This document shows, in pieces, positions 1,115-63,149 of a stretch of DNA of 64,000 nucleotides; within the stretch, counting starts at the first letter, position 1, and each line of letters begins with the position of its first letter. This stretch comes from Macrostomum lignano (taxonomy: Eukaryota), in assembly GCA_002269645.1 (NCBI GenBank), contig NIVC01001131.1, positions 62,001 through 126,000 on the forward strand, in the 5' to 3' direction. The position numbers and the translations under genes are program-made. The notes under the pieces were generated by a model. It did not search any database. It was not told the DNA's origin and was given only the letters and a program-made list of their open reading frames with translations.

Positions 1115-1229
1115 CTTGTTAGTCGCTGTGGGACTGGAATTTGTTGTTACCTGGCTGAAACTGGTTGCCTTGGGCTTATTCTTTGTTAGAGGCCTAGTTT
1201 TTGATGGAGTTGTCAAGTTCAGAAAGGTT

Positions 1230-13429: not shown

Positions 13430-13931
<502 letters not shown>

Positions 13932-23809: not shown

Positions 23810-24185
23810 CTCCCTGACAGTTATTCAGCCACCCTCCCTGACACTTATTGAGCCACCCTCCCTGAGACTTATTGAGCCATCCTCCCTGACACTTAGTGAG
23901 ACACCCTATCTGACACTTATTGAGCCACCCTCCCTGAGACTTATTGAGCCATCCTCTCTGACAGTTATTGAGACATCCTCCCTGACACTTATTGAGCCAT
24001 CCTCCCTCACACTTATTGAGCCACCCTATCTGACACTTATTGAGCCACCCTATCTGACACTTATTGAGCCACCCTATCTGACACTTATTGAGCCACCCTA
24101 TCTGACACTTATTGAGCCATCTTCCCTGACACTTAGTGAGCCATCTTCCCTGACACTTAGTGAGTCACCCTCCCTGACACTTATT
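23810..24185. repeat. 24-bp minisatellite (CCACCCTCCCTGACACTTATTGAG) starting just inside the LHFPL-like intron donor
   Basis: About 15 copies. Confidence 0.9.
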
Positions 24186-24206
24186 CAGCCGAGTCAGCAA
24201 ACTCAC

Positions 24207-42751: not shown

Positions 42752-45543
42752 AGCGTTAGTACTTTCAATAACGATTAAGTACTATTGCTCTAAAAAAAAG
42801 ACAAAATATAATCTTCATACATTAAAAAATATAGTCCATTCAGGGTCTTTCGATATAGCCACTGCCGTTTGTAAAGCAGGCCTCCAGCCACCTCAGAAAG
42901 TCTAGCAGGGCTTTGGTAAGTGTCTCAGGCGAAATCTGGGCCAGATATGAACATGCTTTTTGGTGTCAAAAAATCCATTTTCTATATATTTTCTTACGCT
43001 AAAATCTGGTTGGGATCCAAGTATTAATCACAAAGTTATTCGCGAAACAAGTTATAAAGTTACTTATGGAACACCCTGTATATACTATTGCATAGTAAAA
43101 TATGAGTATGTACATAATGCACAGTTGTCAAAGTGACCATGTTTAGAGGTCACTGATTGGCCAGTTGACAAAGTGACCTGAGGGCAATGGCTTCCCAGTT
43201 GATGAAACGCCAGTTGACGATTTGACTAGGATCAGTCTCTTAGACTCTGGCGAAAGTTTTAGAAAAATGGGAAAATCAGAAGTATTTTACATACCTAAAC
43301 GGCTAAAGTTCAAGAAGTCCGAAAAATTTTATTTAGTTACTAGTACAAAAAATGATACTAAAAATGAAATCACTTACCTTTAGTCTTAGATTCAAAGTCA
43401 ATAAGAACATCTTTCTTATTTCGAAAACTTCTATTTAATTGTGGGTTTATTTGTTGCAACATTCTTGAATTTTTATTTAACTTTTAAGATCCAGTTTCTA
43501 TAAAAAGATTAGGCCCACCCAGGCCAAGACAAAACCTAACAATAGCAAGCCAAGCAAAGGAAACAAATTCTTAATAACTTTGTGTTAAATAGGCCAAAAT
43601 AGAAGACAGTGTCTGGCCTAGAACTGTTTGATTGTCCTTGGCCTGGACTTATTCCTTTCAGATGCCTGTGGCTGTAGTAGGCCCTACTTACTTTACTACT
43701 TAGTGAGATAGTGACTGACTAGAGTTAGAAACAAAAACTGCAACAACTGTTGTTTTTTAGACCGCCTAGTTTAAAGGTCCAAAAAATAAGGCGAGGCCTA
43801 GCTATAAAATTTGCTAAAGCCTGACACTCGCGATACAGAAAGATGCTCACATACGTAGATCAAGGCTGAAGCAATACTAAAGTGGAATTCTGTGAGCCGT
43901 GTGCAGACCGGAAAACTCATTTTCTTAGAAATCGTATAGAACCTATTTAGTACAGTTTAACAAATTAATAAAACAAACTACGTAACATTCTTTGAACAAA
44001 GAACGTAAAACTGTTTTTTACAAAAAAGTAAAAAAATTAAACAATTAGGGCACGCTAGCTTTAAAATACAGTACTTGAATCGTTCAGTCAGTCATCAGGG
44101 TGCTTGAATGCATAGTTAGTTGCATGGTCCGATCCTAGTTTTTTATGTTTTTCTAAGTTGCTCTGGTCATTAGTAACAATTTTTATTTTCAGTTAGAACA
44201 TGTAAGTAAATACGCAGCTCTCAGAATGATCAGAATGATATTGTTACGGTATATAAAAGTTACACGTGTGTATAGCCACAAGTGTCTATATAATTAATAA
44301 TGCATGGAACCGTACGGTACACTGCATGTACATGTTCACTCTGCCGCGGAATATAGCTAAGTTGCGCCACTTGCACAGACTGAGAGAGTTTTGAGTTGCA
44401 CTCGCAATGTGGCGACCATATACGAAATTCTCCGTGATGGCGAATTTTCAATGTCATTCTGAGTATATGGTACGTTCTCCAGCTAGGTTTACGAGCATAT
44501 GGTACATACTGCTAGATTATTAGACTTCTCATGAGAGACACAGCAAAATATTTAAATAAATGAATTTGCTCAATTTTGCTGAGGGAAGGCTACCCCTCAG
44601 AATTAAGGGTATAATTTTCTTTCAAGGGGGGGGGGGGGGGGGACACACCCCTAGAGAAAAAAGACTTCAAAAAAAACTTTTTTGGCCGGGGGTACACATC
44701 TCCCGATCCCCCTCCCTATACATGTACGCCTGCACTGATTGTGCTTTCGGATTAAATATCGAGTGGAAACCGCGCTATATTTCTCAGATTCAATTCAGCT
44801 TGCAGCAGGTACTTTTACTACTTGTGTGGGATGATATACATGTACATGTATACTGTATAAAAAAACCATTTTGCCGTCTTCTAAATTAGTAGGCCAGCAG
44901 TAGAATTGTTGTAGTGTCATTTTTGCTAAACATCTGCAGTGAAATTCGGCGTACGATCGTTATCCAATAAGTACTTTTATTATATTTGCATTGACAAAAT
45001 TAATATAACTACTGCATGGCCGCGTCTGCACAGAAGACGAATTTTTCTAGATAATACGCTTGTTAAGCGTGTATAAATATGTATACATGTATATATAGTA
45101 CATGTATACAGATGCACATGTATACGCCGCAAGATTACCTGGGTACGCGTAACTCCCGATTTTTTCTTTTATTTGCCTAAGGCCCTGAGCCAAACACAAT
45201 AATTACATACTCGTATTATGAGGATCAAAGACTGACACAGCAGATGATCCTATATCACGCATTTTAAGCACAAAATATTTTACGCATTTTTACGCATTGT
45301 GTTCGGTGAACTCGATCTCAATCGTAGTAATGTTAAATTACATAATAATTTGTGCTATTTTAAAGTGGAGAACTTCAAGTAGGAAGCTTTCGATTATTTT
45401 GAAATTTCGTGTACAATTAAGGATCTGTTGTAGCTATGTGCGAACTTTGATATTCTGTATGGGGTGAGTCAATTATAATTGTGAGTAAGTTTATCAAACC
45501 AGATCAGTTCAGTTATCAAAAATATTTTCAGTTCAAAGATATA

Positions 45544-46845
45544 ACTACTATGGACGCATTTTTCCGTCGATTTTGGAGGTGGGGTGGGTGTCAACCCTCC
45601 TCGCCTCTCATTGGCTGGCGCCCCGATCACTAGGTGATCGATACCCGTATCGATATCGGCGCTCGGCGCGCGCGCGCCGCAGGCGCATGGCGCCAAGCGC
45701 CGACCAGCCGCAGGCGCACCCTCCCGATATGTACCCCGATATGTATGCCCTCCCTCCAGAGCAGCAGGCGCCCATGCCGCAGGCGCCCCGATGTACACTC
45801 TCCCCAGTACACTCTCCCCAGTACACTCTCCCGATATGTACGATATGTAGTCAATGATATTAGGCTAGTGAAAACTACTTATAGTAGGTGAAATTGTGTA
45901 TATTTACATAAAAAAAGTAGGCAAAACATATTGGTAGGTGTAAAAAATGGTGCATAATGCAAAATAAAATGTACATATTGGTGCATATGAGCAGCAAAAA
46001 ACACACAATGTAGGTGCAAATTATTGATATATTGGCAGACGGTAAAGCAGACATGATAGCAGGTACATATCGCATTATTAGTGTAGTAGGCGCTAATAAA
46101 ACATAGGCGGAAATACACACAGTATAATGCAGGTGCATACATACACACAATGTAGGTGCAAATTGAGTATAATACAGGAAAATTACATAGCATATAATGT
46201 AGGCGCATTTTAAACGATACATTTTGCATATTAACCCGCAGGCACAAAGTATATATCGGTCATAGGCTAAAATACACACACTGCAAATTGAGTATAATGC
46301 AGGAAAATTGTGACATATACAACATATGTATGCAAAATTAAGCATATAATGTAGGTGCAAAGTAACCACCGGCCTCTAGTAATGAGACACGCCCCCAGAG
46401 CCAGGGCCGGGGGATCCTAGCGGAGTACAGTTCAGGTAGGAGCGTTCCTAGTCTGCAACCCATAGCTTCCAAATAGGGTACGAGGGGCCAATGTTTCGAG
46501 AGGGGATCCTCAGTACAGTGCGGGCAGAGAGAAATTCCAATTCCTCCCCAAGCCCCAAATAAGGTTTTTTCAAGGGGATCCCAAGTACAGTGCGCTCCCG
46601 GGTGTCAAATGATGAAGGAATCCCGCCCCCCAATGCACAGTGCGCTCCCGGGTGTCAAATGATGCCCCAATGTACAGTGGAGGTAGAGTAACAGACCGCA
46701 TACAAAGAGAATTCCAGTCAAACTTTACCGCAGCTCCCACCCCAAATGAGGGTTTTAGTGGATCCCCAGAGGGTAGCTCTCCAAGTTGAGGGATCCCCCC
46801 AGTGTGTTGCGAGGCCCAAGTACAGTGCAGGCAGAGAGTAACAGA
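45544..46845 (+). repeat. Left terminal inverted repeat (~1.3 kb)
   Basis: Colinear reverse complement of 52940-54366 with indels, e.g. GTCAACCCTCCTCGCCTCTCATTGGCTGGCGC and GGCCCAAGTACAGTGCAGGCAGAGAGTAA. Confidence 0.9.
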
Positions 46846-47047
46846 GTACAAAGAGAAATTCCCTTATCAGTCAAACTCGAGCGCGATCTTCAGCCAGGGC
46901 AGTCTCCTCCTCATCAGCGCTCTCGAAACATCTGTCAAAGTAAAACATATTCAATGTAGACAGATTATATGTAATTTATATACGATTTATATGAAATTAA
47001 GCTTACCAAAAATCGGGTTCGCGCTGTACGGATGCGGCACGCCTCAA

Positions 47048-47545
47048 TTAGCAACCCTCGTCAAACAGATTTCCCCAAGGGTAGGGTTTGATGCTGTCAA
47101 GGCAGTCCTGCAGATTGTCCTCTGTCTTGACTCGCTTGGCTGGAGGGGGTGCCTCAGGTGCCGGCTTGAAGAGCTTGTCCAAACGGGCGGCAAACATCCT
47201 GCGCCACAGTTCAGGCGTGAATTCGATCGTGTAGCGCCAATTAAACTTTGGGTCCTGATTGAGCCAATTGCGCAGCAAACGGATCCTCCCTCGCGAAGCT
47301 TCAACTGCCTTGAAATTGCCCAACAGGACCCGCTTGTTCACGCGAAGGCGGGCAGCAGCCTCCAGGTCAGGGCGCGCAGCTTCGAGCTTCTTCCACTCTG
47401 GCTCGGCCAAGTAGATTGCAGGGAAGCCGTCCTTCCACACTCCAGCCTCGTTGGTGTAGAGACGCCGAATTTCAATCAAGTTGTGTTCAGTTTCAAATGT
47501 GGGCTTCCGCGCCACAAAGTTTTCGTATAGAGAGATAGAAGACAT
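47048..47545 (-). CDS. 165-aa protein with two PC4-like repeats (putative ssDNA-binding protein) and an NLS-like PPAKRVK
   Basis: IEIRRLYTNEAGVWKDGFPAIYLAEPEWKKL resembles the PC4 consensus vDIRe.y....G..kPg.kGIsL..eqW..L; second weaker repeat IRLLRNW...YTIEFTPELWRRM; TATA-like box about 45 bp upstream. Confidence 0.65.
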   Translation of the reverse strand: MSSISLYENFVARKPTFETEHNLIEIRRLYTNEAGVWKDGFPAIYLAEPEWKKLEAARPDLEAAARLRVNKRVLLGNFKAVEASRGRIRLLRNWLNQDPKFNWRYTIEFTPELWRRMFAARLDKLFKPAPEAPPPAKRVKTEDNLQDCLDSIKPYPWGNLFDEGC

Positions 47546-47787
47546 GATTTAGCAGCAGCAGCAGAGAGCTCTCTGACAGCCGTGCAGCGCCTTATATACC
47601 CCCGGATGGAGGGTGGGGTGGGTGATGATTTTGGGGGTGATTTGTGATGATTTTGGTTGGTTTTTGGCGATTGACCAATAACAGGCGAGCTGAGCAGATT
47701 TTTTAGTATATATACAGACCCCCAGAGCCAGGGTAGAGATATAATCCTTCTCTCTCCGCTCGCTCTCTCACGCTCTCTGTTTGCAAA
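47546..47787. promoter_or_regulatory. Bidirectional Pol II-type promoter of the element
   Basis: Minus-strand TATATAAGG (plus strand CCTTATATA near 47590) before the PC4-like ATG; CCAAT near 47676; TATATATA near 47706; GATATAAT near 47738 before the pPolB ATG at 47788. Confidence 0.55.
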
Positions 47788-50700
47788 ATGGCTAAACGCA
47801 GCGCCACCGCAACTGCTTTCCTGGCTGACAAGAGGCAACGTCTTTATGGTAAGTTTTAATTAATTTCTGTCTAGACTGTAGTTGCTAGGGTGGGGGTAGG
47901 GGCTGAGCAGCAGCAGCAGCTGCAGGGTCTGTGGGACCGCAGAGTAAACAACAAAGACTGGGACTGCTGCGACAGCTGCGGGGGTCTAGACTGGAGTTGC
48001 TAGGGTGGGGTGCTGCGGCAGGGTCTGTAACAGAGAGTTGCAGGGGAGGGCTAGACAAGTTTCAGCCGGGTTAGCAGCAGCAGCAGCTGCAGGGTCTGTG
48101 GGACAGCAGAGTAAACAAAGACTGGGGCCTCGGGTGGGGTGTTGTCTAGACAGGGAGGGGTGTGCGGCAGCTGATAAGAAATTGCTGCAAAAACAGACAG
48201 AGAGTTGCTAGGGTGCTGCGGCAGAGTACTGATAAGAAATTGGCGTGGTCTGTAACAGATAATCGTTGGGGAGGGCTAGACAAGTTTCAGCCGGGTGGGG
48301 GGCAGAGAGTTGCTGGGACTGTGTAGCGCGGGGGCATACTGATAAGAAATTGGCAGGGGCTGTCTAGACAGGCTGCAGCTAGGCGCAGATAAGAAATTGC
48401 TGCAAAAAACAGAGAGTTGCTGTGGGAGGGGTGCTGCAGAGTAAACAACAAAGACTGGGACTGCTGCGACAGAGGGTTGCCGGGGCCGGGAAAATGACAG
48501 ATTCTTCTGGTTTTTTTTATCTCCTTGTGTTTTTTCAGACGCGTTTGTCCCGCCAACACAGCCGGAATCTGTTACCGGACCGGGTGAGTTATCCAGCCCC
48601 ATTCCCCAGACAGACCCGGGCTGACTCACACTCCCCCATTCCCCCATGCAGGTTTTACGGCCCGGCTGGATAATCAGCGCGACCTGCCCAAGTTTAGGGC
48701 AAAGGGTGTCGAGTATGTGGTGCGTATTACCAACACCGAAGATTTGCGGGAGGTGTTTGCTGACATGCTCGAAGTCTTTAAGCAGGATTTGGCTGGTGAT
48801 GACTTTATGGCCGCGAAATTCGAGAGCGACAATATGCTCAAAGCAGCCCACACTCCCCCGGTGCGTGCAGCCCGCATGACGGCTGAATTGTTGTTTAAGC
48901 ACATTGACAAGATTGTGCAGTCAGACGCAAGCGTACTGTCGAGCAACTTTTCTATCCGGTTGCTAAAGGCCTGGGTGCCTCGAGGTGGATGTGCTCTCGA
49001 GAACAAGCATCTAGAAGAGAGGCACGCTTTTTCAAAGCACTATGTCCGCATCACCAACACGGACAAGAGATGCCTGCTGCGAGCGCTTGTTGTCGCATGC
49101 GCCTATCTGCAATTTGTGGCCAAGCGCATCACCGAGGATGTGTGGCGCACGATCAAGGCCAATTCGTCCAAGCAGACTAAGCTGGTGGCTGAGCTACAAA
49201 TCGAAGCGGGTCTCTACACGGTAAGTTTCTAGTATTTTTCTGATAAGAATTTTTACACAGTATCGTGGAATACAAAAATTTTCTGATAAGAATTTTTACG
49301 CAGTATCATGGAATACTAAAAGAATTTTACATAGTATCAGGGAATACTAAAAGAAATATTTTACCCCCACACAGACTCTTCAAACCGTCTCGCAGGCCGG
49401 TCCTTTCGGGGTGGATGCACTGCCCGAAGCGATCCGTGCCCTGAACCGGCTGCATCCAGGGCACGATTTTGGTGTACGCGTGTACCAGGCAGAGGAGGCC
49501 AACAGGTGCATCTTCAACCTGCCTGGCACCGAGATTCTGCACCTGCACCTGGTCGAGCAGCACTTTAATGTGGTCACCAAGCTGCCTGCGTTTTTCGGCA
49601 GCCACCACTACTGCGACAAGTGCGAGATGGCCTATGATAGCGACCCCGCCAAGCACAAGTGCGCTGATGCCTGCAGTACATGCAAGACTCCGGGCTCCAA
49701 CTGCAAGACCAACCGCGCATATGTAAGATGCCATGATTGCGGGCTAAATTGCTATAATGCTCAGTGCCTAGAAAATCACAAGCGCAAGAATAAGGCGGGC
49801 AGATCTCGCTGTGATTCGGTCCACGTTTGCGGCACGTGTGGCTATCTAGAAGAACTAAAAGTAGGCCAGCCCCCTGAGCATCAGTGTGGTTACGCCAAGT
49901 GTCCAGTCTGCAAGCAGTACGACGAAACTGCCACCCACGAGTGCTTTGTCACCCCGCCCAAAGCCAAAGAGTCTAGCGCCCCGTATGTTTACTATGATTT
50001 CGAGACGTACTTGGACTCTGGCAAGCAGCACCGGGTACACTTGGTTACGGCTGCCACCTCCTGCGAGGCGTGTCCCAAACTCTTCCCCAGGCCCCGCTGC
50101 AGCGCGTGCGGGGGACTACACAGCTCAGCCAATCGCATTGCGGGACGCGATTTGGCACTCGATTTCACGAGCTGTGTCTCGCACAATGACTGTGCCTGTG
50201 GGATGCGAGAGTTTGTTTCGGTTGGGCCGCACTCTATCGATGCCTTTTACTGCTGGCTGACTAGTGTGTTCAAGCAGGGGGCAATTGCTATTGCGCACAA
50301 TGGCTCTGCGTATGACGCATTCCTCCTGCTCGGCGCCCTACTCAACGGACTGGCCAAGAAGAAGCCGCAAGTGATCTTCCAGAACAGCCGCCTAATGTAC
50401 ATGAAGTGCGACAAGATCACCTTCAAGGACAGCCTCAATTTCATCCCTATTGGTCTGGCGCAATTCCCAAAGGCGCTTGGTTTGGGCACCCAACTGACCA
50501 AAGGAGATTTCCCGCACGTGTTTAACCAGCCGGAAAACTGGGGGTACGTGGGACCCTACTGTTCAATTGATATGTATGGAGGAAAGAAAAACAAGCAGCA
50601 TGACTCCATCGCAGACTGGCTGGCCAAGCAGGAGGGACAGGTGTTTAATTTCAATAAGGAGTACCTGGACTACTGCCTGCAGGACACGTTAATTTTGCGG

Positions 50701-52773
50701 GAAGGCTGTCTAAAGTACACCCACCTGATTAAGGACATTTGCGGACTGGACGCATTTGTTCAATCCAACACCATTGCGGGCTTGGCTATGGCTGTTTTCA
50801 CCACCAAGTTTATGGAGCCCAACACTCTTGGGGTGATTTCCCGCCGGTCCGATGTACAGTCGCACAAGGCGCGGTGCTGGCTTGCGCATTTGAATGCAAC
50901 CGAGTTTGGCGGCCGGTTGCGGACAGCGGACTCGGGCGGCGAGGCTTTCGCCATGGGCCGTAAGGTCGACGGCTTCGACCCAGAGACCAGGACAGTGCTG
51001 CAGTTTCATGGCTGCTTCTACCATGGCTGTCCCAAGTGCTTCCCCAACGGCGACGTGCTGCACCCGCTCAAGAACCAGCCAATGCGGGCGATTTATGAGG
51101 AGACTGAGCGCTTCACCCGGTTGCTCTCCACTGCCTACAATGTGCGTGTTCTGTGGGAGCACGACTATCAGGACGAGGGAGCGCCAGTCCAGCAGCCTAT
51201 ACGCCTGGAGGAAGCCCTGTTTGGCGGCCGTACCGAGGCTTTTGTCCCGCACGCCGAGGCCACCGAGACTGTTGAGCTGCGCTATCGGGATGTGGTAAGT
51301 TTGTACACTTGTACACACAGTTGACATGCGTTTGAGTTTATCTTATCCTCTAATTCTCTATTATCCTTATACTTATCCCCTAGGTGTCGCTCTACCCGAC
51401 TGTCAACAAGTTTGACAAGTACCCTGTCGGGCACCCGGTTCACCACCCCGAGCCTCATCTACTGGATGAGCAGCAGCTGGCCCGGTATTTTGGCATCGCC
51501 GAGGTGTCGATTCTGCCGCCAACCAATCTCCACATCCCGCTACTGCCCGCCAAGATTAACAAGAAGCTGGTTTTCGGCCTCTGCCGCGTCTGCATGGAGA
51601 CCCAGTGCAGCAGCGAGTGTACACACACTGACGCTGAGAGAATGCTCCGCGGCACGTGGTCGACCCCAGAGCTCCACAAAGCCCTGCAGTTGGGTTACAA
51701 GCTGCAGTCAGTTCATGCCCTGGCCTATTGGACCGAGACTCGCACGGGCCTGTTTGCAGATTATGTAAACACTTTTTTGAAGCTCAAAGCCGAGTCTAGC
51801 GGTTCGCCGGGGATGACTGAGGACGCCAAGGCTGCCTACATGGCCAGCTTTTTCGAGCGCGAAGGCGTCCGGCTGGAAAAGGTGGAAGAAAATCCCGGCC
51901 TGCGCTTTGTTGCCAAGATTTTTCTAAACTCGTAAGTTTTTCTACTTGCAGTGGGGGACCGCGTTTTTCTACTTACAGAAGCCAGATATACAAAAATTTA
52001 TTTTTCCCTGCAGGCTCTGGGGCAAATTCTGCCAGCGCGACGACCTGACCTCCACAGAGATTGTGGACAGCTACGAGGCGTGGCTGCAGCGCCTGACAGA
52101 CCCCTCGATCAAGGTCAAGTCGTGCGAGCCAATTGGGGAGAGCTTCATGATGCTCGAGTACAAGCCCCGATTTGGCGGTGCTGGCGAGCGGGCGTTCAAG
52201 TACGCTAATGTACCTATTGGCGTTTTCACCACCTCCCACGCCCGGCTGCGACTCTACGAGGCTCTGGAGGGTCTAGGAACCCGCGTCATTTACGCCGATA
52301 CCGATTCGTAAGTAATTTTTTCACTGTCTCTGTCTCTCTTTCTCCCCTTAACACTTTTTTATCCTTCTCCTCCTCCCAGGGTCGTATACCGCTGCTCCCC
52401 GGGCGAGTACGAGCCTCCGGGCGGTTCGAGTTTGGGGCAGTGGACTGACGAGGTACCTGCTGGCTGCCGCATGGTACAGTTCACCACGGGAGGCCCCAAG
52501 CTCTACCGGTACGTGGTGGAGAAGCTCGACAGGTCGCTGTACTCGGTACTCAAGTGCAAGGGCATCAGAGTCACGCCCGAGATTTCCGAGCGCGAGGACG
52601 AGCTGCAGGAAATTCTGCGCCACGGCGGGACTGTACGGCTGCCCCAGGCCCAGTTCAGGCGCGACAAGGCCAGCTGTACAATTCGGACCCTGGAGATGGA
52701 TAAGACATTCCAACGTGTAATGACTAAGCGAGTGTATGGGGCCGCTAGCCGCCCGTATGGCTTTCGTGAGTGA
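47788..52773 (+). CDS. Protein-primed family-B DNA polymerase (Polinton type), 1269 aa. Exons 47788-47848, 48539-48583, 48652-49220, 49396-51294, 51384-51931, 52014-52307, 52380-52773
   Basis: Six GT-AG introns with matching phases (1,1,0,0,2,2); spliced length 3810 nt with no internal stop seen. ExoI YDFET, ExoII AHNGSAYD, ExoIII YCLQD, motif A YRDV|VSLYP, motif B KIFLNS|LWGKF, motif C YADTDS|VVY, GPKLY, KCKGI. N-terminal vOTU-like region and Cys-rich Zn-binding cluster; VSR-like insert KVDGF...FHGCFYHGC. Confidence 0.93.
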
Positions 52774-52939
52774 GTGAAAGATAAGGATCTGTCTTTTTAC
52801 GCCTCTCTGCCTGGGATTCCCCTAAACTCACCCCAACTGTGCATTCTGGCGGGGATCATTTGACACCTCCCCGTACATTGGACGGGATCCCTTCAAGTGT
52901 TAAAACTCCCATTTGACACCTATTCCCTCGGGGCGGTCT

Positions 52940-54366
52940 CTATTACTCTCTGCCTGCACTGTACTTGGGCCTCGCAACACACGGGGGGATCCCTCAACTT
53001 GGAGAGCTACCCTCTGGGGATCCACTAAAACCCTCATTTGGGGTGGGAGCTGCGGTAAAGTTTGACTGGAATTCTCTTGGTATGCGGTCTGTTACTCTAC
53101 CTCCACTGTACATTGGGGCATCATTTGACACCCGGGAGCGCACTGTGCATTGGGGGGCGGGATTCCTTCCTCATTTAACACCCCGGAGCGCACTGTACTT
53201 GGGATCCGCTAAAACCCCTATTTGTATGCGGTCTGTTATTCTGCCCGCCCTGTGCAATGTGAGGGGTCCTTGATAACCCCCATTTGGGGAGGATTGGAAT
53301 GCTCTCTGCCTGAACTGTACTTGGGATCCCCATGAAAAAACCTTATTTGGGGCTTGGGGAGGAATTTCTCTATGTTACTCCTCTCTGGCCGCACTGTACT
53401 TGGGATCCCCCGGCCCTGGCTCTGGGGGCGTGTCTGTTTACTAGGGAGCCGGTTGCTTGTATTTTACACCTACATTATATGCTTAATTTTGCATATATAT
53501 GTTGTATATGTCACAATTTTCCTGCATTATACTCAATTTTCAGTGTGTGTATTTTAGCCTATGCACTGAAATTTGTACCTGCGGGTTATTAAGCAAAAAT
53601 GTATTGTTTAAAATGCGCCTACATTATATGCTATGTAATTTTAGTGTATTATACTCAATTTGCACCTACAGTGTGTGTATTTTAGCCTATGCACCTACAT
53701 AATTGGAATCTAGAGTGTGTGCAATATACTGTGTGTATTTCCACCTATGTAGCGCCTACAGTACCTGCTTTGTCTATTTCTGTCAATATATTGATGCGCC
53801 TACATTGTGTGTATTTTGCTGCTCATATGCTCCAATATGTACATTTTAATATGCAATATGCGTCATTATTCACACCTACCAATATGTTTTATCTACTTTT
53901 TATGTAAATATACGCAATTTCATCTACTATAAGTAGTTTTCACTAGCCTAATATCGCTGACTAGATATCTGTGTATGCATACATATCGGGAGAGTGTACT
54001 GGGGAGAGTGTACACCCGTACTGGGGAGAGTGTACACTCAGGGTGCTTGCGGCATGGGAGAGTGTGCACTCGGGGTGCCTGCGGCATGGGGCGCCTGCAG
54101 CATGGGCGCCTGCTGCTCTGGAGGAAGGGTGCGCCTGCGGCATACATATCGGGAGGGAGGGCATACATGTCGGTACATATCGGGAGGGTGGGCATACATA
54201 TCGGGGTACATATCGGGAGGGTGCGCCTGCGGCATGGGCGCCTAATTGGCGCCTGATTGGCGCTTGGCGCCACGCGCCTGCGGCGCGCGCGCCAGCCAAT
54301 GAGAGGCGAGGAGGGTTGACACCCACCTCACCTCCAAAAACCCCGGATTCGGGTGTCCTTAGTAGT
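52940..54366 (-). repeat. Right terminal inverted repeat (~1.4 kb)
   Basis: Reverse complement of the left TIR. Confidence 0.9.
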
Positions 54367-55293
54367 GATATATACCTGGGCAGCTACAGTGCTGCGGTGT
54401 CGCGCAGGGAGACCCGGTGGTGCCGGTGTCCGCAGCGCCGTCCCCTCTTGAGAGTCCAGAAGGTGGATGGTCGCTCACCCGCTGTAGCCCTGAGGTAGTG
54501 TAGACGAGTTGGCTGAATTTTCGGGACTGAAGACGTCGTAATTGCGTCGGGTTTGAGCCGACTTAGATGAGCCTGTCCTGAGTAAAAACGGGTGTTTTTT
54601 TACCGCTGAGTAAAAAAGAGGGCCGATGTCGGGCAAAACAGCAAAGAAACGACGATGTCCCTGCGTTTGAGTCCAAGCAGAGCTCTATGGAAGTCCGGGG
54701 GGATGAACGGGAACAGCCTCGCGGGAAATTTCCGGCAGTCGGGGGGTGTTAGCACAGATACTTACAAGAGAGCGATGCTCTATTTGCGATATCGATCCAT
54801 CAGTCCATCCATCTTTCATTTAAATATCGTGCCAAGGACGACTTAAGTGGAAGGACGGGAAACCTCGTTTCTTAGGCACTTTTTCCCGAAAAAATACACT
54901 GCGGAGATAGGAAGTTTTCATTTTTTCAGCATAAAAATTCCTATAACTTTTGATAGGAGGCAGATCCAGTGTTCATCTTTTGATATGTTGTGCTTTTTTA
55001 TTGCTCTATCGATATTTATAAAGCTTTCCGTTCAGAAAATTAGGATTCTATGTCAATTTTTTTTCTACTTCTCCTTCTACTTAAGTCGTTCTTGTATCGT
55101 GCGTCTACGCCTATTTCTGATCTATTTCTGTCAAAAATGCCCATGTCTATGACCAAACCTACACGCCGCTCTTTCAGGCCAAAGTATTTCGATTTTCAGA
55201 TACACACTTTGATTGCAAGATTAAGCACTGGGAAGTTCAACGGACATTGAAAAAATTCATCACGCTGGTTGGATGAGACTGTTGAGTCTTCGC

Positions 55294-55432: not shown

Positions 55433-55599
55433 GTAAGATTCCACACTGTGTACGGGCTTTGTTCGAGCTAATTAAATACACATTTCTTATATGTTCCAAT
55501 TTTGGGGCCAATGAGAGCATTTTTCGATACTAAAATTGCTTGTTCAACTGTCTGGTTTATAGCACTCCAGCTCTGTCGCACAATTAGACTTATAAGATC

Positions 55600-56025
55600 C
55601 TCGGTTGGTGAGCCACCCTCAGAGATCCTCAGTTGCGAGGCCACCCTCCCAGATGCTCAGTTGCTGGGCCAGCCAGCCTCCAAGATCCTCAGTTGCTAGG
55701 CTACCCTCCCAGATGCTCACTTGCTGGGCCACCTTCAGAGATCCTCAGTTGCTGGGCAAGGCTCCCAGACCCTCAGTTGCTGGGCCAGCCTCCCAGATTC
55801 TCAGTTGCTGGGCCAGTCGCCCAGATCCTCAGTTGCTGGGCCAGCCTCCCAGATCCTCAGTTGCTGGGCCACCCTCCCAGATCCTCAGTTGCTGGGCCAG
55901 CCTCCCAGATGCTCAGTTTCTGGGCCACCCTCAGAGATCCTCAGTAGCTCGGCCACCCTCTCAGATGCTCAGTTTCTGGGCCACCAGCCTCCCAGATCCT
56001 CAGTTGCTGTGCCGGCTTCCCAGAT
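55600..56025. repeat. ~29-bp intronic minisatellite (CCCAGATCCTCAGTTGCTGGGCCAGCCTC)
   Basis: Direct reading; reverse-complement relative at 37085-37190. Confidence 0.9.
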
Positions 56026-57264: not shown

Positions 57265-60200
57265 TGTCGTATCGCGTGACTCAGCGGGTGTACATTGAGT
57301 TCACTCGCTGTTTTATTGTATCGATTGACTGACAATGCTTCATTGAGCGTGACTAGTGTGTGCGTTCTTTTAAAACCCTTGTGCTTTTATGCATCAATCA
57401 TTCTTACGTTCGCTTGTACCAAAAATATAAAAGTCGTCTAGTGAGCTCAGAGCTCAATACTTTTTGATTTCTCGCACTAACCACTATAGAGATGTTTTAG
57501 TGGCGACGAGGAATGTGGCTGAGCAATGCCTAACCACGCAATCGGAGAATATGAGGACTCCGAGGAAACCTGGAATGAGTACCAGGAGCGTCTGGAGCAA
57601 CATTTCCTGGCACAGGACATCACCGACGAAAGTAAAAAGAGGGCCACCCTGCTGAGCGTCTGCGGTAGGAAAACCTTTCAGTTGGCCAGAAGCCTCTGCT
57701 CTCCAGCCAAAGTCGCGGACAAATCCTATGCCGAAATATGCGAGCTGCTGAGCGCTCATTTCAACCCAAGGCCGAGTGAGATCATTCAGAGGTTCCACTT
57801 CAATAACCGAGTTCAGCGCCCTGGAGAGTCGGTGGCAGAGTTCCTTGCGGAGCTGCGGAAGCTGGCGGAGTTCTGCAATTACGGCGGCAGCCTGTCTGAC
57901 AGGCTGCGCGACAGGCTGGTGTGCGGCATCGCGGACCAGCAAATCCAGCGCCGGCTCCTGATGGAGGCCGAGCTGACCCTCGATACTGCCAAACAGATCG
58001 CGCAAGCGGGCGAGTCAGCAGCCAAAAACTGTCAATCGCTGGGCTCAGCAAAACCTGCGGCAACGACATCAGCATCGTCAGCGACAGAGAGCGACTCCGT
58101 GCTTCGAATGGAACGACAGCGACCGCAAGACAGCCGTCAGTCTGGAATAGAAGGCCGGTGGCGCTGTTTCCGCTGCTTGTCGACTCGCCATCCGGCAGCC
58201 AAATGTCCCTTCGCGGACAAACGCTGTTTCAACTGCAGCAAAACCGGACAAACCGCGAAGGCATGCAAGGCGGTGACACAGCAGCAGCAAATGCACCAGC
58301 TGGTTGACCAGCAGCCTTCACACAGCAGCTCAGCTCAGGCCGCCGAGCCGCCCAGCCCAGCCGAGGTCGCTTATCCCTTCTACCATCTGGGTGCTGACCG
58401 ATCGCAGGCCAGGTTTCCTCCAATCGTGACCTCTGTCTTCATCGAGGAGAAGCGATTCGAGATGGAGGTGGACACGGGGGCATCCGTATCGCTGATGTCC
58501 GAACGTACGTTCAAGGAAAACCTGGGAAGCCGGATGTCTCTGTCTGCGTCAACGGTTCAGCTCAGTACGTACACCGGTCAAACCGTCCGTGTCCTCGGTC
58601 AGCTCTTCGTAAGCGTGCGAGCTTCGCAAGGTTCGGCCGAGGAACAGCTGCCGCTGCTGGTTGTTGCCGGTTGTGGTCCGAGCCTCCTTGGTCGAGACTG
58701 GCTACACCGCCTGCGGCTGGACTGGCAATCTATCAAGCGGATGGAAGAAGCTGATGCAGCCAAGGAGTTGCTACAGGAGTTCTCAGAAGTCTCCCAAGGT
58801 CTGGGCGAGTTCAGCGGCAAGCCGGTGTCCATCAGTCTGAAGGAGAACGCCAGACCAAGGTTCTGTAAGGCGCGGCCGGTGCCGTTTGCGCTGCGCGAGA
58901 AGGTTGAGCAGCAGCTGCAGAAGGAAATCGACCAAGGAATCCTGGTGCCGGTCAAAAATTCCGACTGGGCGTCCCCGATCGTGCCGGTAATGAAGTCCGA
59001 CGGCAGCGTGCGCATCTGCGCTGATTTCAAGCAGTCGGTCAACGCAGCTATCCGGCCTGAGGCTTACCCGCTGCCGAACATCGATGAGCTGTTTTCACGC
59101 TTAGCTGGTGGTAAGAAGTTTTCAAAACTGGATCTGAGCCAGGCATTTTCGCAGCTTCCCCTGGATGAGGATGCTCAAGAGCTCTGTACCATCAACACCT
59201 CGCTGGGACTTCTTTGCTACACCCGTCTGCCTTTCGGCGTGTCGATCGCAACCAGCGTGTTTCAGCGGGTGATGGACAGCTTACTGCGAGGAATTTCGCA
59301 CTCTGCATCCTTCATCGATGATGTCATCATCACAGGCGAAGACGACGCCAGTCACCTCCGCAACCTGAGAGCAGTTCTGAAGGTCTTCAAGGAGTCCGGG
59401 CTGACCTGCAAGCTTGAGAAGTGCACCTTTTTTAAGGACGAAGTCACATACCTAGGCCACCGCATCGACGCCGAAGGGCTGCACCCGCTGGACGATAAGG
59501 TCTGAGCTGTGCTGGACGCGCCTGCACCGACTAACACGACTCAACTGAGGAGCTTCTTGGGCCTTATCAACTACTACGTCAAGTTTTTGCCAAATCTCTC
59601 TAGTGTTTTGGCCCCGCTGCACAGGCTGTTGGAGAAGAACTCAAGGTGGCAGTGGGATCGCAGCGAGGCGGACGCGTTCAGCGCGGCAAAGCAGCTGCTC
59701 ACGCACCCCAGCGTCCTAGTCCACTATAACGCTGCAGAAGAGCTCTACCTGGAGTGCGACGCATCGCAGTACGGGCTCGGTGCCGTCATATTCCACCGTC
59801 GGGACGGCATAGACAAGCCGATCGCGTACGCTTCGCGCAGCCTCAGCTCAGCAGAGAAAAAATACTGCCAGCTGGAGAAGGAGGCCTTGGCGCTAGTTTT
59901 CGGTGTGAAAAAATTCCATCACTATCTGTTTGGTCGGGAGTTCAACCTGTTGACCGACCACCGGCCGCTTCTCGGCCTTCTAGGACAAGAGCGACCGCTT
60001 CCAGCCGTGGCTTCCGGCCGAGTCCAACGATGGGCGTTGCTGCTGACCGCGTACCGGTACCGTCTTGTACACCGCAGCGGGGTCTCCATGCTCCGAGCAG
60101 ACGCCTTAAGCCGCCTTCCTGCATCAGCGGGCCCTAAGGAAGTTCCGGTGCCTCCAGAAGTCGTGCAATTAATGGACTGCCTGGACGCCGGGCCGGTGAC

Positions 60201-61802
60201 TTCATCAGACGTGCGCACCTGGTCCCGCCGCGACCCTACATTGTCACGCGTAATTCTTTACTGTCTCTCGGCCTGGCCAGACCGAGATTCCTGGACTTCT
60301 GATTTGGTGCCCTTTAGGAAACGGCACCAGGAATTGTCAGTTCAAGACGGCTGCGTTCTCTGGGGCAGTCGTGTCGTCATTCCTGAAGTCGGCCAAAGCC
60401 GCTTGCTCGACTGCCTGCATGTTGGACACCTGGAGCATCCCGGATGAAGTCGCTTGCCAGAAGTTACATATGGTGGCCGGGCATGGATCGTGACATTGAG
60501 GCCAAGGCAGCAAGCTGCACGGACTGCCAGAAGCACCAGCAAGCCGGACCAGAAGCTCCGCTGCAGCCATGGCCGCTAACGGCAAGGCCTTGGAGAATCC
60601 ACGTCGATTTTGCCGGTCCCGTCCAAGGTCGGATGCTGCTGGTGGTTGTCGACTCCTTCTCAAAGTGGCTCGATGTGTACGTAACGACAGCGATGACGAC
60701 CTTCGCAACAGTTGAAAAGCTGCGACAGAGCTTCAGCACTCATGGCCTACCGGAGACCATCGTCTCGGACAATGGGCCAAGCTTTGCCAGCTTCGAGTTC
60801 GACGCCTTTTGTGCCAAGAACGGAATTCGGCACATCCGCACGCCTCCCTACCACCCGGCTTCCAATGGCCAAGCTGAGCGAGCAGTGCAAACTGTTACGA
60901 ACTCCCTGAAGAAGCAGGCCAACGACGGCAGCTCCCTGGAGACCCAGCTGGCCAGATTCCTGCTCAGCTACCGTACTACACCGCATCCAACGACGGGAGT
61001 GGCACCGTGTGAGCTGCTGATGCACCGGACGCTGCGCAGCCTGCTCGACGTACCGAGGCCAGACATCGCCAAGCGAGTTCTCGAGAGCCAGGAAAAGCAG
61101 AAGCAGCAGCACGACTCGGGCGCGCAAAGACGAGTCTTCGAGGAGGGCGAGGCGGTGTTCGTTCAAGACTTTAGCCGCGGGAACGAGCGAACCTGGACAT
61201 CGACTATGGTGGTCGGCAAGGAGGGCAGCAACTGGTACAAGTGCATTCTGCCGAACAACCGGATGGTGCGGCGGCACACAGAACAGATGCGAATCGACAA
61301 GACTTCCCAGCGGTCTGGGCCGCTGCAGACGAATCCGGAATCCAACGGTGAGCTCAGGCCTCCACTACCGCAACCGTTGGTTCCGCCGCCACCGCCGCTG
61401 CAGCTGCCGCCGCCACCGCCACCGTCGCCGCCGCCGCCGCCGCCAACGCCGCCGCCACCGTCGCAGCCTCGACCGCTGCAACTTCCAGATCAAGGACCAG
61501 CACAGCTCTCAGAAGATCAAGCAGAGCTCGATCGATTCCCGTCCGCCTAAACTACGATGGGAGAGGTGTCGTATCGCGTGACTCAGCGGGTGTACATTGA
61601 GTACACTCGATGTTTTATTTTATCAATTGACTGAAAATGCCTCATTGAGCGTGAATAGTGTGTGCGTTCTTTTAAAACCCTTGTGCTTTTTATGCCTCAA
61701 TTATTCTTACGTTCGCTTGTACCAAAAATATAAAAGTCGTCTAGTGAGCTCAGAGCTCAATACTTTTTGATTTCTCGCACTAACCACTATAGAGTTGTTT
61801 TA
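57265..61802 (+). mobile_element. Ty3/gypsy (Mag-like) LTR retrotransposon, full length
   Basis: LTRs 57265-57499 and 61567-61802; 5-bp TSD CCCCA at 57260-57264 and 61803-61807; PBS TGGCGACGAGGA at 57501, complementary to the 3' end of tRNA-Ser(GCU); PPT GATGGGAGAGG before the 3' LTR. Confidence 0.95.
57526..61550 (+). pseudogene. gag-pol polyprotein (Gag with CCHC knuckles, PR VDTGA, RT, RNase H, IN) with one in-frame TGA (59503-59505) and one frameshift near 60430
   Basis: CFRC...H...C and CFNC..TGQ...C; MEVDTGASVS; WASPIVPV, FSKLDLSQAF, RLPFG, FIDD; CDASQYGLG, TDHRPL; H...WWPGM...C..C, HVDFAGP, SDNGP, ERAV. Confidence 0.9.
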
Positions 61803-62270: not shown

Positions 62271-63149
62271 AGTATCAGTCAGTATCAGTTAACAATATGG
62301 TTACGCAATCTAAATCAAGTCTGGTGCTACGCTTCCACACTGCATTTTCAATACTGTGACGCAATTCAAGTCGGAGTTACAATTCAGTTATGATGCAATC
62401 TATTTCAGAATCAGAATTCAACCAGTCAGTCTTTTCTCTAGCATTCTTACAATGCATTTCAAGTCGAAAATTTTGCTTGACCTTTGCAAAAAAGCACGTT
62501 TTTCGAATATTTAATCCCTTTAGCATCGAGCAATTTCTTAGCCACGATGCATGTACCGTCACGGAAAAATTTCTGATCGAACAGTGCAAGTTCGAAGAAA
62601 ATCTGTCCAGCCGTTCCGTCGGGAGAAAATCGATTTCGTGCAAGCAAGCAAGATTTTCATTTTTAGTATATTAGATTTAGTATATTTAATGGAAAAACTT
62701 TTTCATTTTTAGAATACTAGATTTTTATTATACCCCCCTTAATTGGTTACGCAAGTTAAATAGAGTATTTATCTGGGCAGTGGGGCGCAGTGAGTTTTCT
62801 CATCAGTTAGCGTCGATGCAATCATTAAAATTGGCTGTGAATTCTCTCGCTTCGCACAGGCTGATAAAATCTGCATTAAAAAAGCCCATTTAAAACAGTT
62901 TTTCGAATATTTAATCCCCTTAGCATTGAGCTAGAGCTTAATAAAATTACATGTACCGTCCCGGGCACATTTGACATCTTTTGGCGAAGAAACGGAAAAA
63001 ATCGGTTGAGCCTTTCGGGAGATAATCGATTTCGTACAAGCAAGCAATTTTTTCATTTTTAGTATATTCGACTAGCCAATTCCAACCCCCGTTGGGGCTT
63101 TCCGTCCAAACTCCAATCACAGTTTTCCCACGCAATAAAATTTCACCCC

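What the first reader, a model, noticed from the sequence alone, without database searches (positions are those of the whole stretch)
45544..54366. Two-gene, integrase-less and capsid-less Polinton-like element with a perfect 6-bp TSD and an intact replicase
Seen: the 8823 bp are essentially accounted for by left TIR (1.3 kb), a 0.2 kb spacer, PC4-like gene, divergent promoter, pPolB gene (5.0 kb) and right TIR (1.4 kb), flanked by GATATA on both sides. Known: canonical Polintons/Mavericks are larger and carry a retroviral-type integrase, packaging ATPase, adenain-like protease and jelly-roll capsids; their integrase makes 5-6 bp TSDs. Inference: this is a helper-dependent, satellite- or linear-plasmid-like replicon. 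It keeps its own protein-primed replication module but borrows integration in trans. A simple decayed deletion derivative would be less expected to keep an intact spliced polymerase.
Basis: partly seen in the sequence, partly recalled or inferred. Interest (0 to 1): 0.93.

Follow-up and report, generated by a model that had tools for sequence, protein, structure and literature searches.

The report
Minimal integrase-less Polinton in a flatworm
An 8.8-kb mobile element in a Macrostomum flatworm genome keeps only the self-priming DNA polymerase of a Polinton/Maverick virus-like transposon plus one small orphan gene; it has no integrase or capsid genes, so it is an unusually stripped-down but multi-copy variant of a known element type.

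Summary
The structure is real. Window 45544-54366 has long imperfect terminal inverted repeats (1303 and 1429 nt) and is flanked by a perfect GATATA duplication. Two divergent genes lie between the repeats. One is a 7-exon, 1276-codon protein-primed family-B polymerase (pPolB) with six canonical introns, no stops, and all exonuclease and polymerase motifs. The other is a 165-aa orphan ORF.

The polymerase is polinton-type. It has an OTU-like protease domain, a Cys/His cluster and a Vsr-like insert. Its relatives on other contigs sit beside rve integrase, A32-type ATPase, adenain-like protease and a probable capsid gene. Profiles of all of these find nothing in the element.

The host is Macrostomum lignano or a close relative. 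At least 41 paralogous polymerase gene models exist. Seven show the same small-gene/polymerase adjacency, and none carries other polinton genes.

"PC4-like" is not supported. Supply of integrase in trans is the most likely reading but could not be tested, because no Macrostomum DNA was reachable.

One puzzle remains: the repeat arms are only about 82% identical, yet the 3.8-kb coding sequence is intact.

Verdict: new variant of a known kind, of moderate interest.

The parts
45538..45543 (.). Left copy of the 6-bp target-site duplication, GATATA
   Evidence: Read directly. Identical to 54367-54372.
45544..46846 (+). Left terminal inverted repeat, 1303 nt. Begins with the reiterated trinucleotide ACTACTA.
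   Evidence: Inverted-repeat blocks. Global alignment to the right arm gives 82.5% identity over aligned pairs; the innermost ~270 nt are 97-98% identical. Reiterated motifs found only in the arms: CCGCAGGCGC x3, CCCGATATGTA x3, AAGTACAGTG x2. Short tandem arrays are present. No Pfam hit for the ORFs inside it.
45583..45618 (+). 36-nt subterminal block that is identical in both arms (positions 40-75 from the end). Candidate recognition site.
   Evidence: Exactly two matches in the window, at 45583-45618 (+) and 54292-54327 (-). None in 100 shuffles. No match in IMG/VR.
46871..47545 (-). Small orphan gene. The unspliced ORF is 165 aa (47048-47545). A short second exon encoding an acidic tail is used in paralogous gene models and is also present here. 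The protein is basic (pI 9.3) and has a basic PPAKRVK motif.
   Evidence: ORF listed. Its codon-position GC pattern (0.57/0.42/0.65) matches that of pPolB (0.58/0.43/0.69), whereas the overlapping plus-strand ORF shows the reverse pattern. The only homologues are Macrostomum proteins P0043-P0047. No hit in Pfam, PHROGs or PDB sequences. The AF2 model has pLDDT 37. hhalign probability is <1% against every conserved polinton gene cluster. Second exon and pI.
47546..47787 (.). Divergent promoter region between the two start codons. TATA-like boxes at 47592-47598 (facing the small gene) and 47707-47714 (facing pPolB).
   Evidence: Read directly. Promoter function is inferred and was not tested.
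47788..52773 (+). pPolB gene with 7 exons: 47788-47848, 48539-48583, 48652-49220, 49375-51294, 51384-51931, 52014-52307, 52380-52773. 1276 codons. Unbroken: 0 stops, 0 frameshifts.
   Evidence: Introns read directly. Splice model checked for frame, stops and motifs. Pfam DNA_pol_B_2 at 4e-18 and 7e-14. A profile of the family hits phi29 polymerase 1XHX at 1e-7. 97% identical to M. lignano P0001.
48993..49599 (+). OTU-like cysteine protease domain of pPolB (approximate bounds; spans intron 3). Cys in DKRCLLRAL (codon 176), His in HFNVV (codon 288). The region upstream of it (47788-48992) is the presumed terminal-protein domain.
   Evidence: Cys and His motifs are conserved across the family. 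An AF2 model of the first 199 aa of paralogue P0001 has pLDDT 71.7. All ten best Foldseek PDB hits are OTU deubiquitinases (best E 1.3e-3, probability 0.96, TM 0.27-0.43). The TP-vOTU-pPolB architecture of polintons is described in PMC11161782. The terminal-protein assignment is inferred from position only.
49597..49959 (+). Cys/His-rich cluster (probable zinc-binding) between the OTU-like and exonuclease domains
   Evidence: About 17 invariant or near-invariant Cys/His columns across distant relatives. Weak zinc-finger matches in PDB sequences.
49972..50799 (+). 3'-5' exonuclease domain. Motifs YYDFE, AHNGSAYD and YCLQDT at codons 431, 532 and 658.
50965..51183 (+). Vsr-like (very-short-patch-repair type) endonuclease-like insert between the exonuclease and palm domains. 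Contains GRKVDGF...QFHGCFYHGCPKCF.
   Evidence: tblastn hit to a Salicola phage ORF at 8e-9. PHROG 'endonuclease' at E 0.01. The family profile hits Vsr structures 1VSR, 1CW0 and 1ODG at E ~0.03. D, G, H, G, C and E columns are invariant in the family. Endonuclease inserts in polinton pPolBs are noted in PMC11161782. The evidence is weak but consistent.
51202..52773 (+). Polymerase palm/fingers/thumb. Motifs DVVSLYP, LNSLWGKF, YADTDS and GGPKLY at codons 864, 1046, 1141 and 1183.
52938..54366 (-). Right terminal inverted repeat, 1429 nt. Ends ...TAGTAGT.
   Evidence: Motif copies: CCGCAGGCGC x3, CCCGATATGTA x5, AAGTACAGTG x3. Contains the 36-nt block at 54292-54327.
54367..54372 (.). Right copy of the 6-bp target-site duplication, GATATA
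   Evidence: Read directly.

Best explanation
This is one copy of a multi-copy family of minimal, non-autonomous Polinton/Maverick derivatives in Macrostomum.

**Shown**
- It is a TIR-bounded, TSD-flanked insertion.
- Its only genes are an intact, intron-bearing polinton-type pPolB and a small lineage-specific ORF, transcribed divergently from a central 242-nt region.
- The pPolB has an N-terminal region, an OTU-like protease, a Cys/His cluster, an exonuclease, a Vsr-like insert and a palm.
- No integrase, packaging ATPase, maturation protease or capsid gene is present.

**Inferred**
- The pPolB polyprotein supplies the primer (terminal-protein domain), its release (OTU-like protease) and the polymerase. 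The element can therefore copy its own DNA from its ends. The reiterated ACTACTA terminus fits the sliding-back or jumping-back step known for protein-primed replication.
- Insertion, with its 6-bp staggered cut, needs an rve-type integrase that the element does not encode. The most likely source is an autonomous polinton in the same genome that recognises the shared terminal heptamer and the identical 36-nt subterminal block.
- The small basic protein, with a nuclear-localisation-like motif and an acidic tail, would be an accessory DNA-binding or replication factor.
For: - **TIRs and TSD:**
- **Intact 7-exon pPolB with all motifs:**
- **Polinton-type architecture:** Pfam DNA_pol_B_2; phi29 polymerase and Vsr hits; OTU fold; architecture as in PMC11161782.
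- **Relatives are canonical polintons:** L004 carries pPolB, rve and Pox_A32. Among 87 related loci, 26 have the ATPase and 14 the integrase by profile search. By all-vs-all clustering, 9 have the adenain-type protease and 9 the ~450-520 aa probable capsid protein.
- **None of these genes is in the element.** In the whole window, the only integrase is that of a separate Ty3/Gypsy element.
- **Family evidence:** at least 41 M. lignano pPolB models. Seven carry the small-gene region directly upstream in the same order. No rve, ATPase, protease or capsid similarity appears in any of the 46 models.
- **Class features:** a 6-bp TSD and long TIRs are hallmarks of the class (PMC3014272; PMC8969392). 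Non-autonomous and capsid-less polintons are already catalogued (PMC4028283 Table S1). Polintons are known in flatworms.
Against: - No autonomous partner with matching termini was found or could be searched for.
- The termini are 5'-AC...GT-3'. They are not the 5'-AG...TC-3' I recall being reported for polintons, nor the TG...CA of retroviral-type ends.
- The two arms are only ~82% identical. That is unexpected for a recently replicated protein-primed linear genome. If it reflected neutral decay in place, it would predict ~13 stops and ~31 indels in the CDS, which has none.
- Transposition, as opposed to host duplication, is not shown. TSDs of other copies are unknown, and the host is a recent polyploid (PMC5704211).
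- The role of the small protein is a guess.
Confidence: 0.55

Rival explanations
1. Host-retained (co-opted) genes. This is an old insertion whose outer TIRs are decaying neutrally. The pPolB, the small ORF and the inner TIR parts that serve as their 3' ends are kept by purifying selection for a host function.
For: The outer arms are 41-89% identical per 150 columns, while the inner ~270 nt are 97-98% identical and the 3.8-kb CDS is unbroken. Six spliceosomal introns with consensus signals show the gene is well adapted to host expression.
Against: There are at least 41 paralogous models at 53-98% identity, with several divergent sublineages. That looks like a proliferating family, not one co-opted locus. 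The terminal heptamer and the 36-nt subterminal block are still identical in both arms, which fits continued selection on the ends.
Confidence: 0.13
2. Dead-end deletion derivative. A full polinton lost its right-hand genes once. The many 'copies' come from whole-genome and segmental duplication of the host, and the ORF is intact only because the event is young.
For: The host lineage is a recent polyploid with large duplications (PMC5704211, PMC10733133). No TSD of any other copy could be examined.
Against: Forty-one models spanning 53-98% identity are too many and too diverse for polyploidy alone. Different host domains (ADAM, C2H2 zinc fingers) are fused to different models, which points to different loci. 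No model carries a remnant of integrase, ATPase, protease or capsid. If the event were young, the arms would be nearly identical, and they are not.
Confidence: 0.12
3. Mobilised by an unrelated cut-and-paste transposase. In this reading it is a TIR transposon of a family that makes 6-bp TSDs and has captured a polinton pPolB cassette.
For: The termini do not match the recalled polinton AG...TC ends. The arms carry reiterated subterminal motifs of the kind used as transposase binding sites. The target is a TA-repeat. Ginger2 elements, whose integrase is close to that of polintons, prefer 6-bp RTATAY targets (PMC2836005).
Against: Ginger2 ends follow TGTNR, and these ends do not. 1.3-kb TIRs and a trinucleotide-reiterated terminus are more typical of protein-primed replicons. 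Capture would not explain retention of an intact 1276-codon polymerase across many copies.
Confidence: 0.1
4. Integrase-independent element. The linear, protein-capped copy made by its own pPolB re-enters chromosomes through the polymerase's Vsr-like nuclease domain or through host end-joining, without any integrase.
For: The Vsr-like insert keeps its conserved D/H/C/E columns. No integrase gene is seen in the element or fused to any family member.
Against: The same insert is present in relatives that do encode integrase, so it is not a replacement for one. End-joining would not give a clean 6-bp duplication at both ends. The endonuclease assignment itself is weak (E 0.01-0.03).
Confidence: 0.08
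5. Assembly artefact that created a false inverted duplication.
For: Long inverted repeats can arise from chimeric long reads.
Against: The arms differ by 221 mismatches and 22 indel events, and they enclose a unique 6-kb centre with coherent genes. The junctions carry a matching TSD.
Confidence: 0.01

Closest known systems
Canonical Polintons/Mavericks (class Polintoviricetes). Examples are the loci recovered here (L004, L011, L042, L045) and the Schmidtea Polinton-1_SM and -2_SM listed in PMC4028283.
   Same: Polinton-type pPolB with an OTU-like domain, Cys/His cluster and endonuclease insert. Long TIRs, a 6-bp TSD and integration in an animal genome.
   Different: No rve integrase, A32-type ATPase, adenain-like protease or capsid gene. 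At 8.8 kb it is smaller than every one of the ~70 elements in that table (10.3-48.9 kb). The termini are AC...GT, and the arms are only ~82% identical.
Catalogued non-autonomous and capsid-less polintons (Polinton-1N1_DR, Polinton-2N1_DR, P_Gi1.1, Polinton-1_TV, Polinton-1_EI; PMC4028283 Table S1)
   Same: Polinton derivatives that lack the whole capsid-morphogenesis module. That paper describes 'concerted loss' and a continuum between virus and transposon states.
   Different: Those elements are 11-20 kb. The table does not score integrase, so whether any is integrase-less yet polymerase-intact is not known from what I could read. Here the loss extends to the integrase while the replicase stays intact, and the family is multi-copy.
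Linear pPolB plasmids of fungal and plant mitochondria and yeast cytoplasm
   Same: Small TIR-bounded replicons built around a protein-primed polymerase with a fused terminal protein. They have no integrase and no capsid (PMC11161782).
   Different: Those plasmids are extrachromosomal and usually also carry an RNA polymerase. This element is chromosomal with a TSD, has spliceosomal introns and carries no RNA polymerase. An extrachromosomal form was not tested.
Adenoviruses and phi29-like phages (mechanistic analogy only)
   Same: Protein-primed replication from inverted terminal repeats whose first bases are a short reiteration, used for sliding-back or jumping-back (my own knowledge of the mechanism). 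The phi29 polymerase is the best solved-structure sequence match.
   Different: Not a member of either group. It has no capsid genes, and its terminal protein is presumed to be fused to the polymerase, as in polintons.
PC4/Sub1 single-stranded-DNA-binding coactivators
   Same: Small size only.
   Different: No Pfam PC4 match, even at E <= 0.1. No match to PDB sequences. The structure model is too poor to compare.

Membership tests
Polinton/Maverick | [quoted passage not shown] | tested here: met
   Pfam DNA_pol_B_2. Profile hit to phi29 polymerase. Exo I-III and polymerase motifs are intact. OTU fold found for the paralogue's N-terminus. Nearest relatives with known context are polintons. The terminal-protein domain itself was not tested.
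Polinton/Maverick | Retroviral-type (rve) integrase gene | tested here: not met
   An integrase profile from 14 related loci finds only the Gypsy integrase at 60387-61547 and nothing in 45544-54366. There is no coding room left in the element.
Polinton/Maverick | FtsK/A32-type packaging ATPase | tested here: not met
   An ATPase profile from the related loci gives no window hit better than E 0.68.
Polinton/Maverick | Adenain/Ulp1-type maturation protease | tested here: not met
   The protease cluster (Pfam Peptidase_C5) was used as a profile and gave no window hit better than E 0.44.
Polinton/Maverick | [quoted passage not shown] | tested here: not met
   A profile of the ~450-520 aa cluster next to the protease in related loci gives no hit. 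Its identity as the capsid protein is inferred from position and size. No penton profile was available. No unassigned coding space remains in the element.
Polinton/Maverick | 6-bp target-site duplication | tested here: met
   GATATA on both sides. Stated as a class feature in PMC3014272 and PMC8969392.
Polinton/Maverick | Terminal inverted repeats of hundreds of nucleotides | tested here: met
   1303 and 1429 nt, but only ~82% identical.
Polinton/Maverick | 5'-AG...TC-3' termini (recalled from the original description; I could not check this in a paper here) | tested here: not met
   The termini are 5'-ACTACTA...TAGTAGT-3'.
Non-autonomous derivative of an autonomous polinton | An autonomous element in the same genome with matching termini that supplies the integrase | not testable with these tools
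   No Macrostomum DNA is in any collection. The integrase-profile search returned 5550 hits, of which only the best 120 were shown, and none was named Macrostomum.
Non-autonomous derivative of an autonomous polinton | Several copies with the same reduced layout at different sites | tested here: inconclusive
   Seven paralogous gene models carry the small-gene region directly upstream of pPolB, and an eighth carries it on the opposite strand. None of the 46 models carries other polinton genes. The flanks and TSDs of those copies are unknown.
Linear pPolB plasmids | Extrachromosomal linear DNA with protein-capped ends | not testable with these tools
   Only the integrated copy is visible.
PC4/Sub1 family (small gene) | Match to the PC4 domain profile or fold | tested here: not met
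   No Pfam hit at E <= 0.1. No PDB sequence hit at E <= 10. The AF2 model has pLDDT 37, so the fold comparison is not meaningful.

The most novel reading that the evidence does not exclude
A replicase-only offshoot of polintons that no longer depends on any integrase. It would persist and spread as a protein-capped linear episome made by its own TP-OTU-pPolB polyprotein. It would re-enter chromosomes through the polymerase's Vsr-like nuclease domain or through host repair. That would make it an animal nuclear counterpart of fungal linear plasmids, caught in its integrated state.
Probability: 0.07. Interest if true: 0.85.

Novelty: new variant of a known kind. Interest (0 to 1): 0.5.

Why it matters
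Polintons are treated as viruses that double as transposons, and known reductions mostly remove the capsid module. Here the reduction goes the other way round. The integration gene is lost, yet a 1276-codon replicase stays intact across a multi-copy family.

If copies prove to sit at different sites, two conclusions would follow:
- Replication in these elements acts preferentially on the DNA that encodes the polymerase, so it must be kept.
- Integration can be borrowed from another element.

That would be a clear division of labour between parasite and hyper-parasite inside an animal genome. It would also give a small, tractable reference case for the steps that lead from polintons to linear plasmids and other reduced pPolB replicons.

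For genome annotation, it explains dozens of 'DNA-directed DNA polymerase' gene models in Macrostomum lignano. It also shows that several of those models wrongly fuse antisense sequence of the neighbouring small gene.

Tried and rejected
1. **PC4-like small gene.** Pfam, PHROGs, PDB-sequence profile, AF2 (pLDDT 37) and hhalign against conserved polinton gene clusters all gave nothing. The label is dropped and the gene is treated as an orphan.
2. **Plus-strand ORF 46802-47530 as the real gene.** This is how several UniRef pPolB models read it. Rejected because the codon-position GC pattern fits the minus strand, and independent minus-strand models exist down to 71% identity.
3. **Frame changes in pPolB as frameshifts.** Rejected. 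All six junctions are consensus GT-AG introns and the spliced frame is open.
4. **The rve integrase 6 kb downstream as the missing integrase.** Rejected. It lies inside a Ty3/Gypsy element with its own LTRs and gag-PR-RT-RNaseH.
5. **Fetching other Macrostomum copies.** Exact-protein look-ups failed. The IMG/VR scan for the 36-nt block found nothing. Contexts of P0038, P0039 and P0042 were too short or had no DNA.
6. **Integrase-profile search for a Macrostomum integrase.** Uninformative, because only 120 of 5550 hits are listed.
7. **Other short TIR-flanked pPolB-only elements.** Seven related loci that lack other core genes were checked, and none had flanking inverted repeats.
8. **tRNA and Rfam scans of the element.** Nothing found.
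9. **Poly(A) hexamers in the TIRs.** None found.
10. **Literature on polintons in Macrostomum.** None found.


Full report
**1. Observation**

Inverted-repeat blocks pair 45539-46846 with 52938-54371. Reading both ends shows the element starts ACTACTATGG at 45544 and ends ...CCTTAGTAGT at 54366. GATATA lies immediately outside on both sides. GATATA is nearly palindromic. It matches 6/6 as a direct repeat but only 4/6 as a continuation of the inverted repeat, so it is a target-site duplication.

The arms are 1303 and 1429 nt. A global alignment gives 1044 matches, 221 mismatches and 22 gap events. That is 82.5% identity over aligned pairs and 71% over all columns. Identity is uneven along the arms:
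- The first 7 nt are identical.
- A 36-nt block at positions 40-75 from each end is identical (45583-45618 and 54292-54327).
- The innermost ~270 nt are 97-98% identical.
- The rest is 41-89% identical per 150 columns and is partly made of short tandem arrays.

The arms carry reiterated motifs that occur nowhere else in the window: CCGCAGGCGC, CCCGATATGTA and AAGTACAGTG. Nothing else in the 64-kb window resembles the element.

**2. Genes**

The polymerase lies on the plus strand. Its apparent frame changes are introns, not damage. Five junctions read GTAAGT...AG and one GTGAGT...AG, with pyrimidine-rich acceptors, and four of the six introns are AT-rich.

The exons are 47788-47848, 48539-48583, 48652-49220, 49375-51294, 51384-51931, 52014-52307 and 52380-52773. 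With them the CDS is 3831 nt, starts with ATG, ends with a stop and has no internal stop, giving 1276 codons. I counted zero breaks in this gene. All diagnostic motifs are present: Exo I-III, DVVSLYP, LNSLWGKF, YADTDS and GGPKLY.

The small gene lies on the minus strand. A 165-aa ORF (47048-47545) starts 242 nt from the polymerase ATG. TATA-like boxes face each gene. Paralogous gene models splice this ORF to a short exon encoding an acidic tail. That exon is also present here and ends at 46871.

The minus strand is the coding one. Its GC by codon position (0.57/0.42/0.65) mirrors that of pPolB (0.58/0.43/0.69), and the overlapping plus-strand ORF shows the reverse pattern. The two genes, the promoter and the arms account for essentially the whole 8823 bp. 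No tRNA or Rfam family is present.

**3. What the polymerase is**

- Pfam DNA_pol_B_2 matches two exons.
- A profile of the family matches phi29 polymerase (1XHX, 1e-7).
- Aligned with distant relatives, the protein shows an N-terminal region, a Cys...His pair (DKRCLLRAL...HFNVV), about 17 conserved Cys/His positions, the exonuclease, an insert, and the palm.
- The N-terminal 199 aa of the 97%-identical paralogue P0001 fold with pLDDT 71.7. All ten best Foldseek PDB matches are OTU deubiquitinases (best E 1.3e-3, probability 0.96), although TM-scores are low at 0.27-0.43.
- The insert matches a phage ORF (8e-9), a PHROG 'endonuclease' (E 0.01) and Vsr endonuclease structures (E ~0.03).

This is the architecture described for polinton pPolBs: terminal protein, vOTU and polymerase, with occasional endonuclease inserts (PMC11161782). 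The terminal-protein assignment here rests on position only.

**4. Relatives and their context**

The exhaustive protein search finds 6354 relatives at E <= 1e-3 and 697 at E <= 1e-30. They include insect proteins and 12-18 kb contigs.

- IMG/VR locus L004 (13.4 kb, E 2e-74) carries pPolB followed by an rve integrase, and also a Pox_A32 ATPase.
- Among the 87 fetched loci, profile searches find the ATPase in 26 and the integrase in 14.
- All-vs-all clustering also gives an adenain-type protease cluster (Pfam Peptidase_C5) and an adjacent ~450-520 aa cluster that is probably the capsid protein, each in 9 loci.
- The clustering under-counts, but of 33 loci with at least 3 kb of flank, at least 16 carry one of these genes.

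The polymerase therefore belongs with canonical polintons.

**5. What is missing**

Profiles of the integrase, ATPase, protease, probable capsid protein and three further conserved small genes were run against the six-frame translation of the whole window. The only hit is the integrase at 60387-61547 (1e-12). It belongs to a separate Ty3/Gypsy retrotransposon with its own LTRs (~57265-57499 and ~61567-61802) and gag-PR-RT-RNaseH. ORFs inside the arms have no Pfam match. The 'integrase-less and capsid-less' claim holds.

**6. Host and family**

The best matches are all Macrostomum lignano proteins, at up to 97-98% identity. With the representative search there are at least 41 paralogous pPolB models at 53-98% identity. 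These are automatic gene models of uneven quality.

- Seven of them (P0006, P0024, P0025, P0026, P0028, P0032, P0035) begin with the antisense translation of the small-gene region, followed by pPolB. Those genomic copies therefore have the same order and orientation as here. An eighth (P0027) carries the small protein in sense, which is either a structural variant or a model error.
- No model has an rve, ATPase, protease or capsid match. The only extra domains are host ones: ADAM and C2H2 zinc fingers.
- The small protein has only Macrostomum homologues, five clusters down to 71% identity.

This argues for a multi-copy two-gene family. It cannot show different insertion sites, because no Macrostomum DNA is in any collection I could reach.

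**7. The small gene**

No Pfam, PHROG or PDB-sequence match exists. The structure model is unusable (pLDDT 37). There is no profile similarity to any conserved polinton gene cluster. It is basic (pI 9.3), has a PPAKRVK motif of the classical nuclear-localisation type, and has an acidic tail in the spliced form. 'PC4-like' is unsupported. An accessory DNA-binding role is only a guess.

**8. Mechanism**

Shown: the anatomy described above.

Inferred from what is established for protein-primed replicons and polintons:
- The polyprotein provides the primer, the protease that frees it, and the polymerase.
- Replication starts at the ends. The reiterated ACT-ACT-A terminus would allow sliding-back or jumping-back.
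- The 6-bp duplication is the footprint of an rve-type integrase, which must come from elsewhere.
- The identical heptamer and 36-nt block are the obvious candidates for what a trans-acting integrase, or the polymerase itself, recognises.

**9. A puzzle**

Suppose the difference between the arms were neutral decay since insertion, at about 8.7% per arm. The CDS has 452 single-base changes that would create a stop. It should then have gained about 13 stops (P of none 2e-6) and about 31 indels at the arms' indel rate. It has none.

Two readings fit. Either the arms were already unequal when this copy was made, as a family trait or through recombination between family members and with no homogenisation of ends. 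Or the genes and inner arm parts are held by selection or conversion in place. The second reading is the co-option rival. Comparing arms between copies would decide between them.

**10. Comparison with what is known**

Polintons are described as 15-25 kb (up to 40 kb) elements with pPolB, integrase, protease, ATPase, 6-bp TSDs and TIRs of hundreds of nucleotides (PMC6431247, PMC3014272, PMC8969392).

A table of about 70 elements spans 10.3-48.9 kb. It includes flatworm (Schmidtea) members, named non-autonomous families, and nine elements that lost the whole capsid module (PMC4028283). Mavericks are expanded in planarians. I found nothing on polintons in Macrostomum.

This element meets the polymerase, TIR and TSD criteria. 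It fails the integrase, ATPase, protease and capsid criteria, and also the recalled AG...TC terminus. It is a polinton derivative, not a full member.

**11. Verdict**

It is a new variant of a known kind: the smallest polinton-type element I could compare it with, and reduced to replicase plus one orphan gene while remaining multi-copy and intact. Interest is moderate (0.5). It would rise if the census shows true transposition with borrowed integration, or free linear copies.

Noticed in passing
window 57265-61802: A separate Ty3/Gypsy LTR retrotransposon on the plus strand. Its LTRs (~235 nt) are 92-94% identical, and it has gag, aspartic protease, RT, RNase H and rve integrase domains. The gag-pol reading frame is interrupted twice: one in-frame stop and one frame change.
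   Followed up: partly
window 45044-45543 versus 54373-54872: The two flanks of the insertion differ sharply in composition: 33% GC on the left and 54% GC on the right. The element therefore sits at a compositional boundary, possibly the edge of another repeat or of an exon.
   Followed up: no
window 47849-48538: Intron 1 of pPolB is 690 nt, GC-rich (0.54) and full of short repeated motifs. The other five introns are 68-154 nt, and four of them are AT-rich. It could hold regulatory sequence or a decayed insertion.
   Followed up: no
window 49236-49364: Intron 3 of pPolB contains a 31/43-nt tandem duplication.
   Followed up: no
window 55595-56014: A tandem array of a 28-nt unit, about 14 copies, just right of the element. 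Short inverted repeats lie at 54921-54997/56490-56566 and 56091-56166/56476-56551.
   Followed up: no
window 63110-63764: Arrays of 16-nt and 27-nt C/A-rich tandem repeats.
   Followed up: no
window 24181-24732, 29381-30211, 37170-37754 (minus strand): Host exons: an LHFPL-like membrane protein, and exons with SH3 and FCH/F-BAR domains that probably belong to one gene. The element lies about 8 kb from the nearest of them.
   Followed up: no
window 1-5000, 9000-10000, 13000-19000: Blocks with extreme strand skew (GC skew up to +/-0.77) that suggest low-complexity or satellite-like DNA. One 1-kb block near 18 kb reaches 63% GC.
   Followed up: no
M. lignano proteins P0006, P0024-P0028, P0032, P0035 (UniRef gene models): Several public 'DNA-directed DNA polymerase' models of M. 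lignano start with the antisense translation of the neighbouring small gene, and many skip parts of the polymerase. They are mis-annotated transposon genes. P0027 fuses the small protein in sense, which hints at a structural variant of the element.
   Followed up: partly
window 45538-45543 / 54367-54378: The pre-insertion target TTCAAA-GATATA-TACCTG is a TA-repeat. Ginger2 transposons, whose integrase groups with polinton integrases, are reported to prefer 6-bp RTATAY targets (PMC2836005).
   Followed up: no
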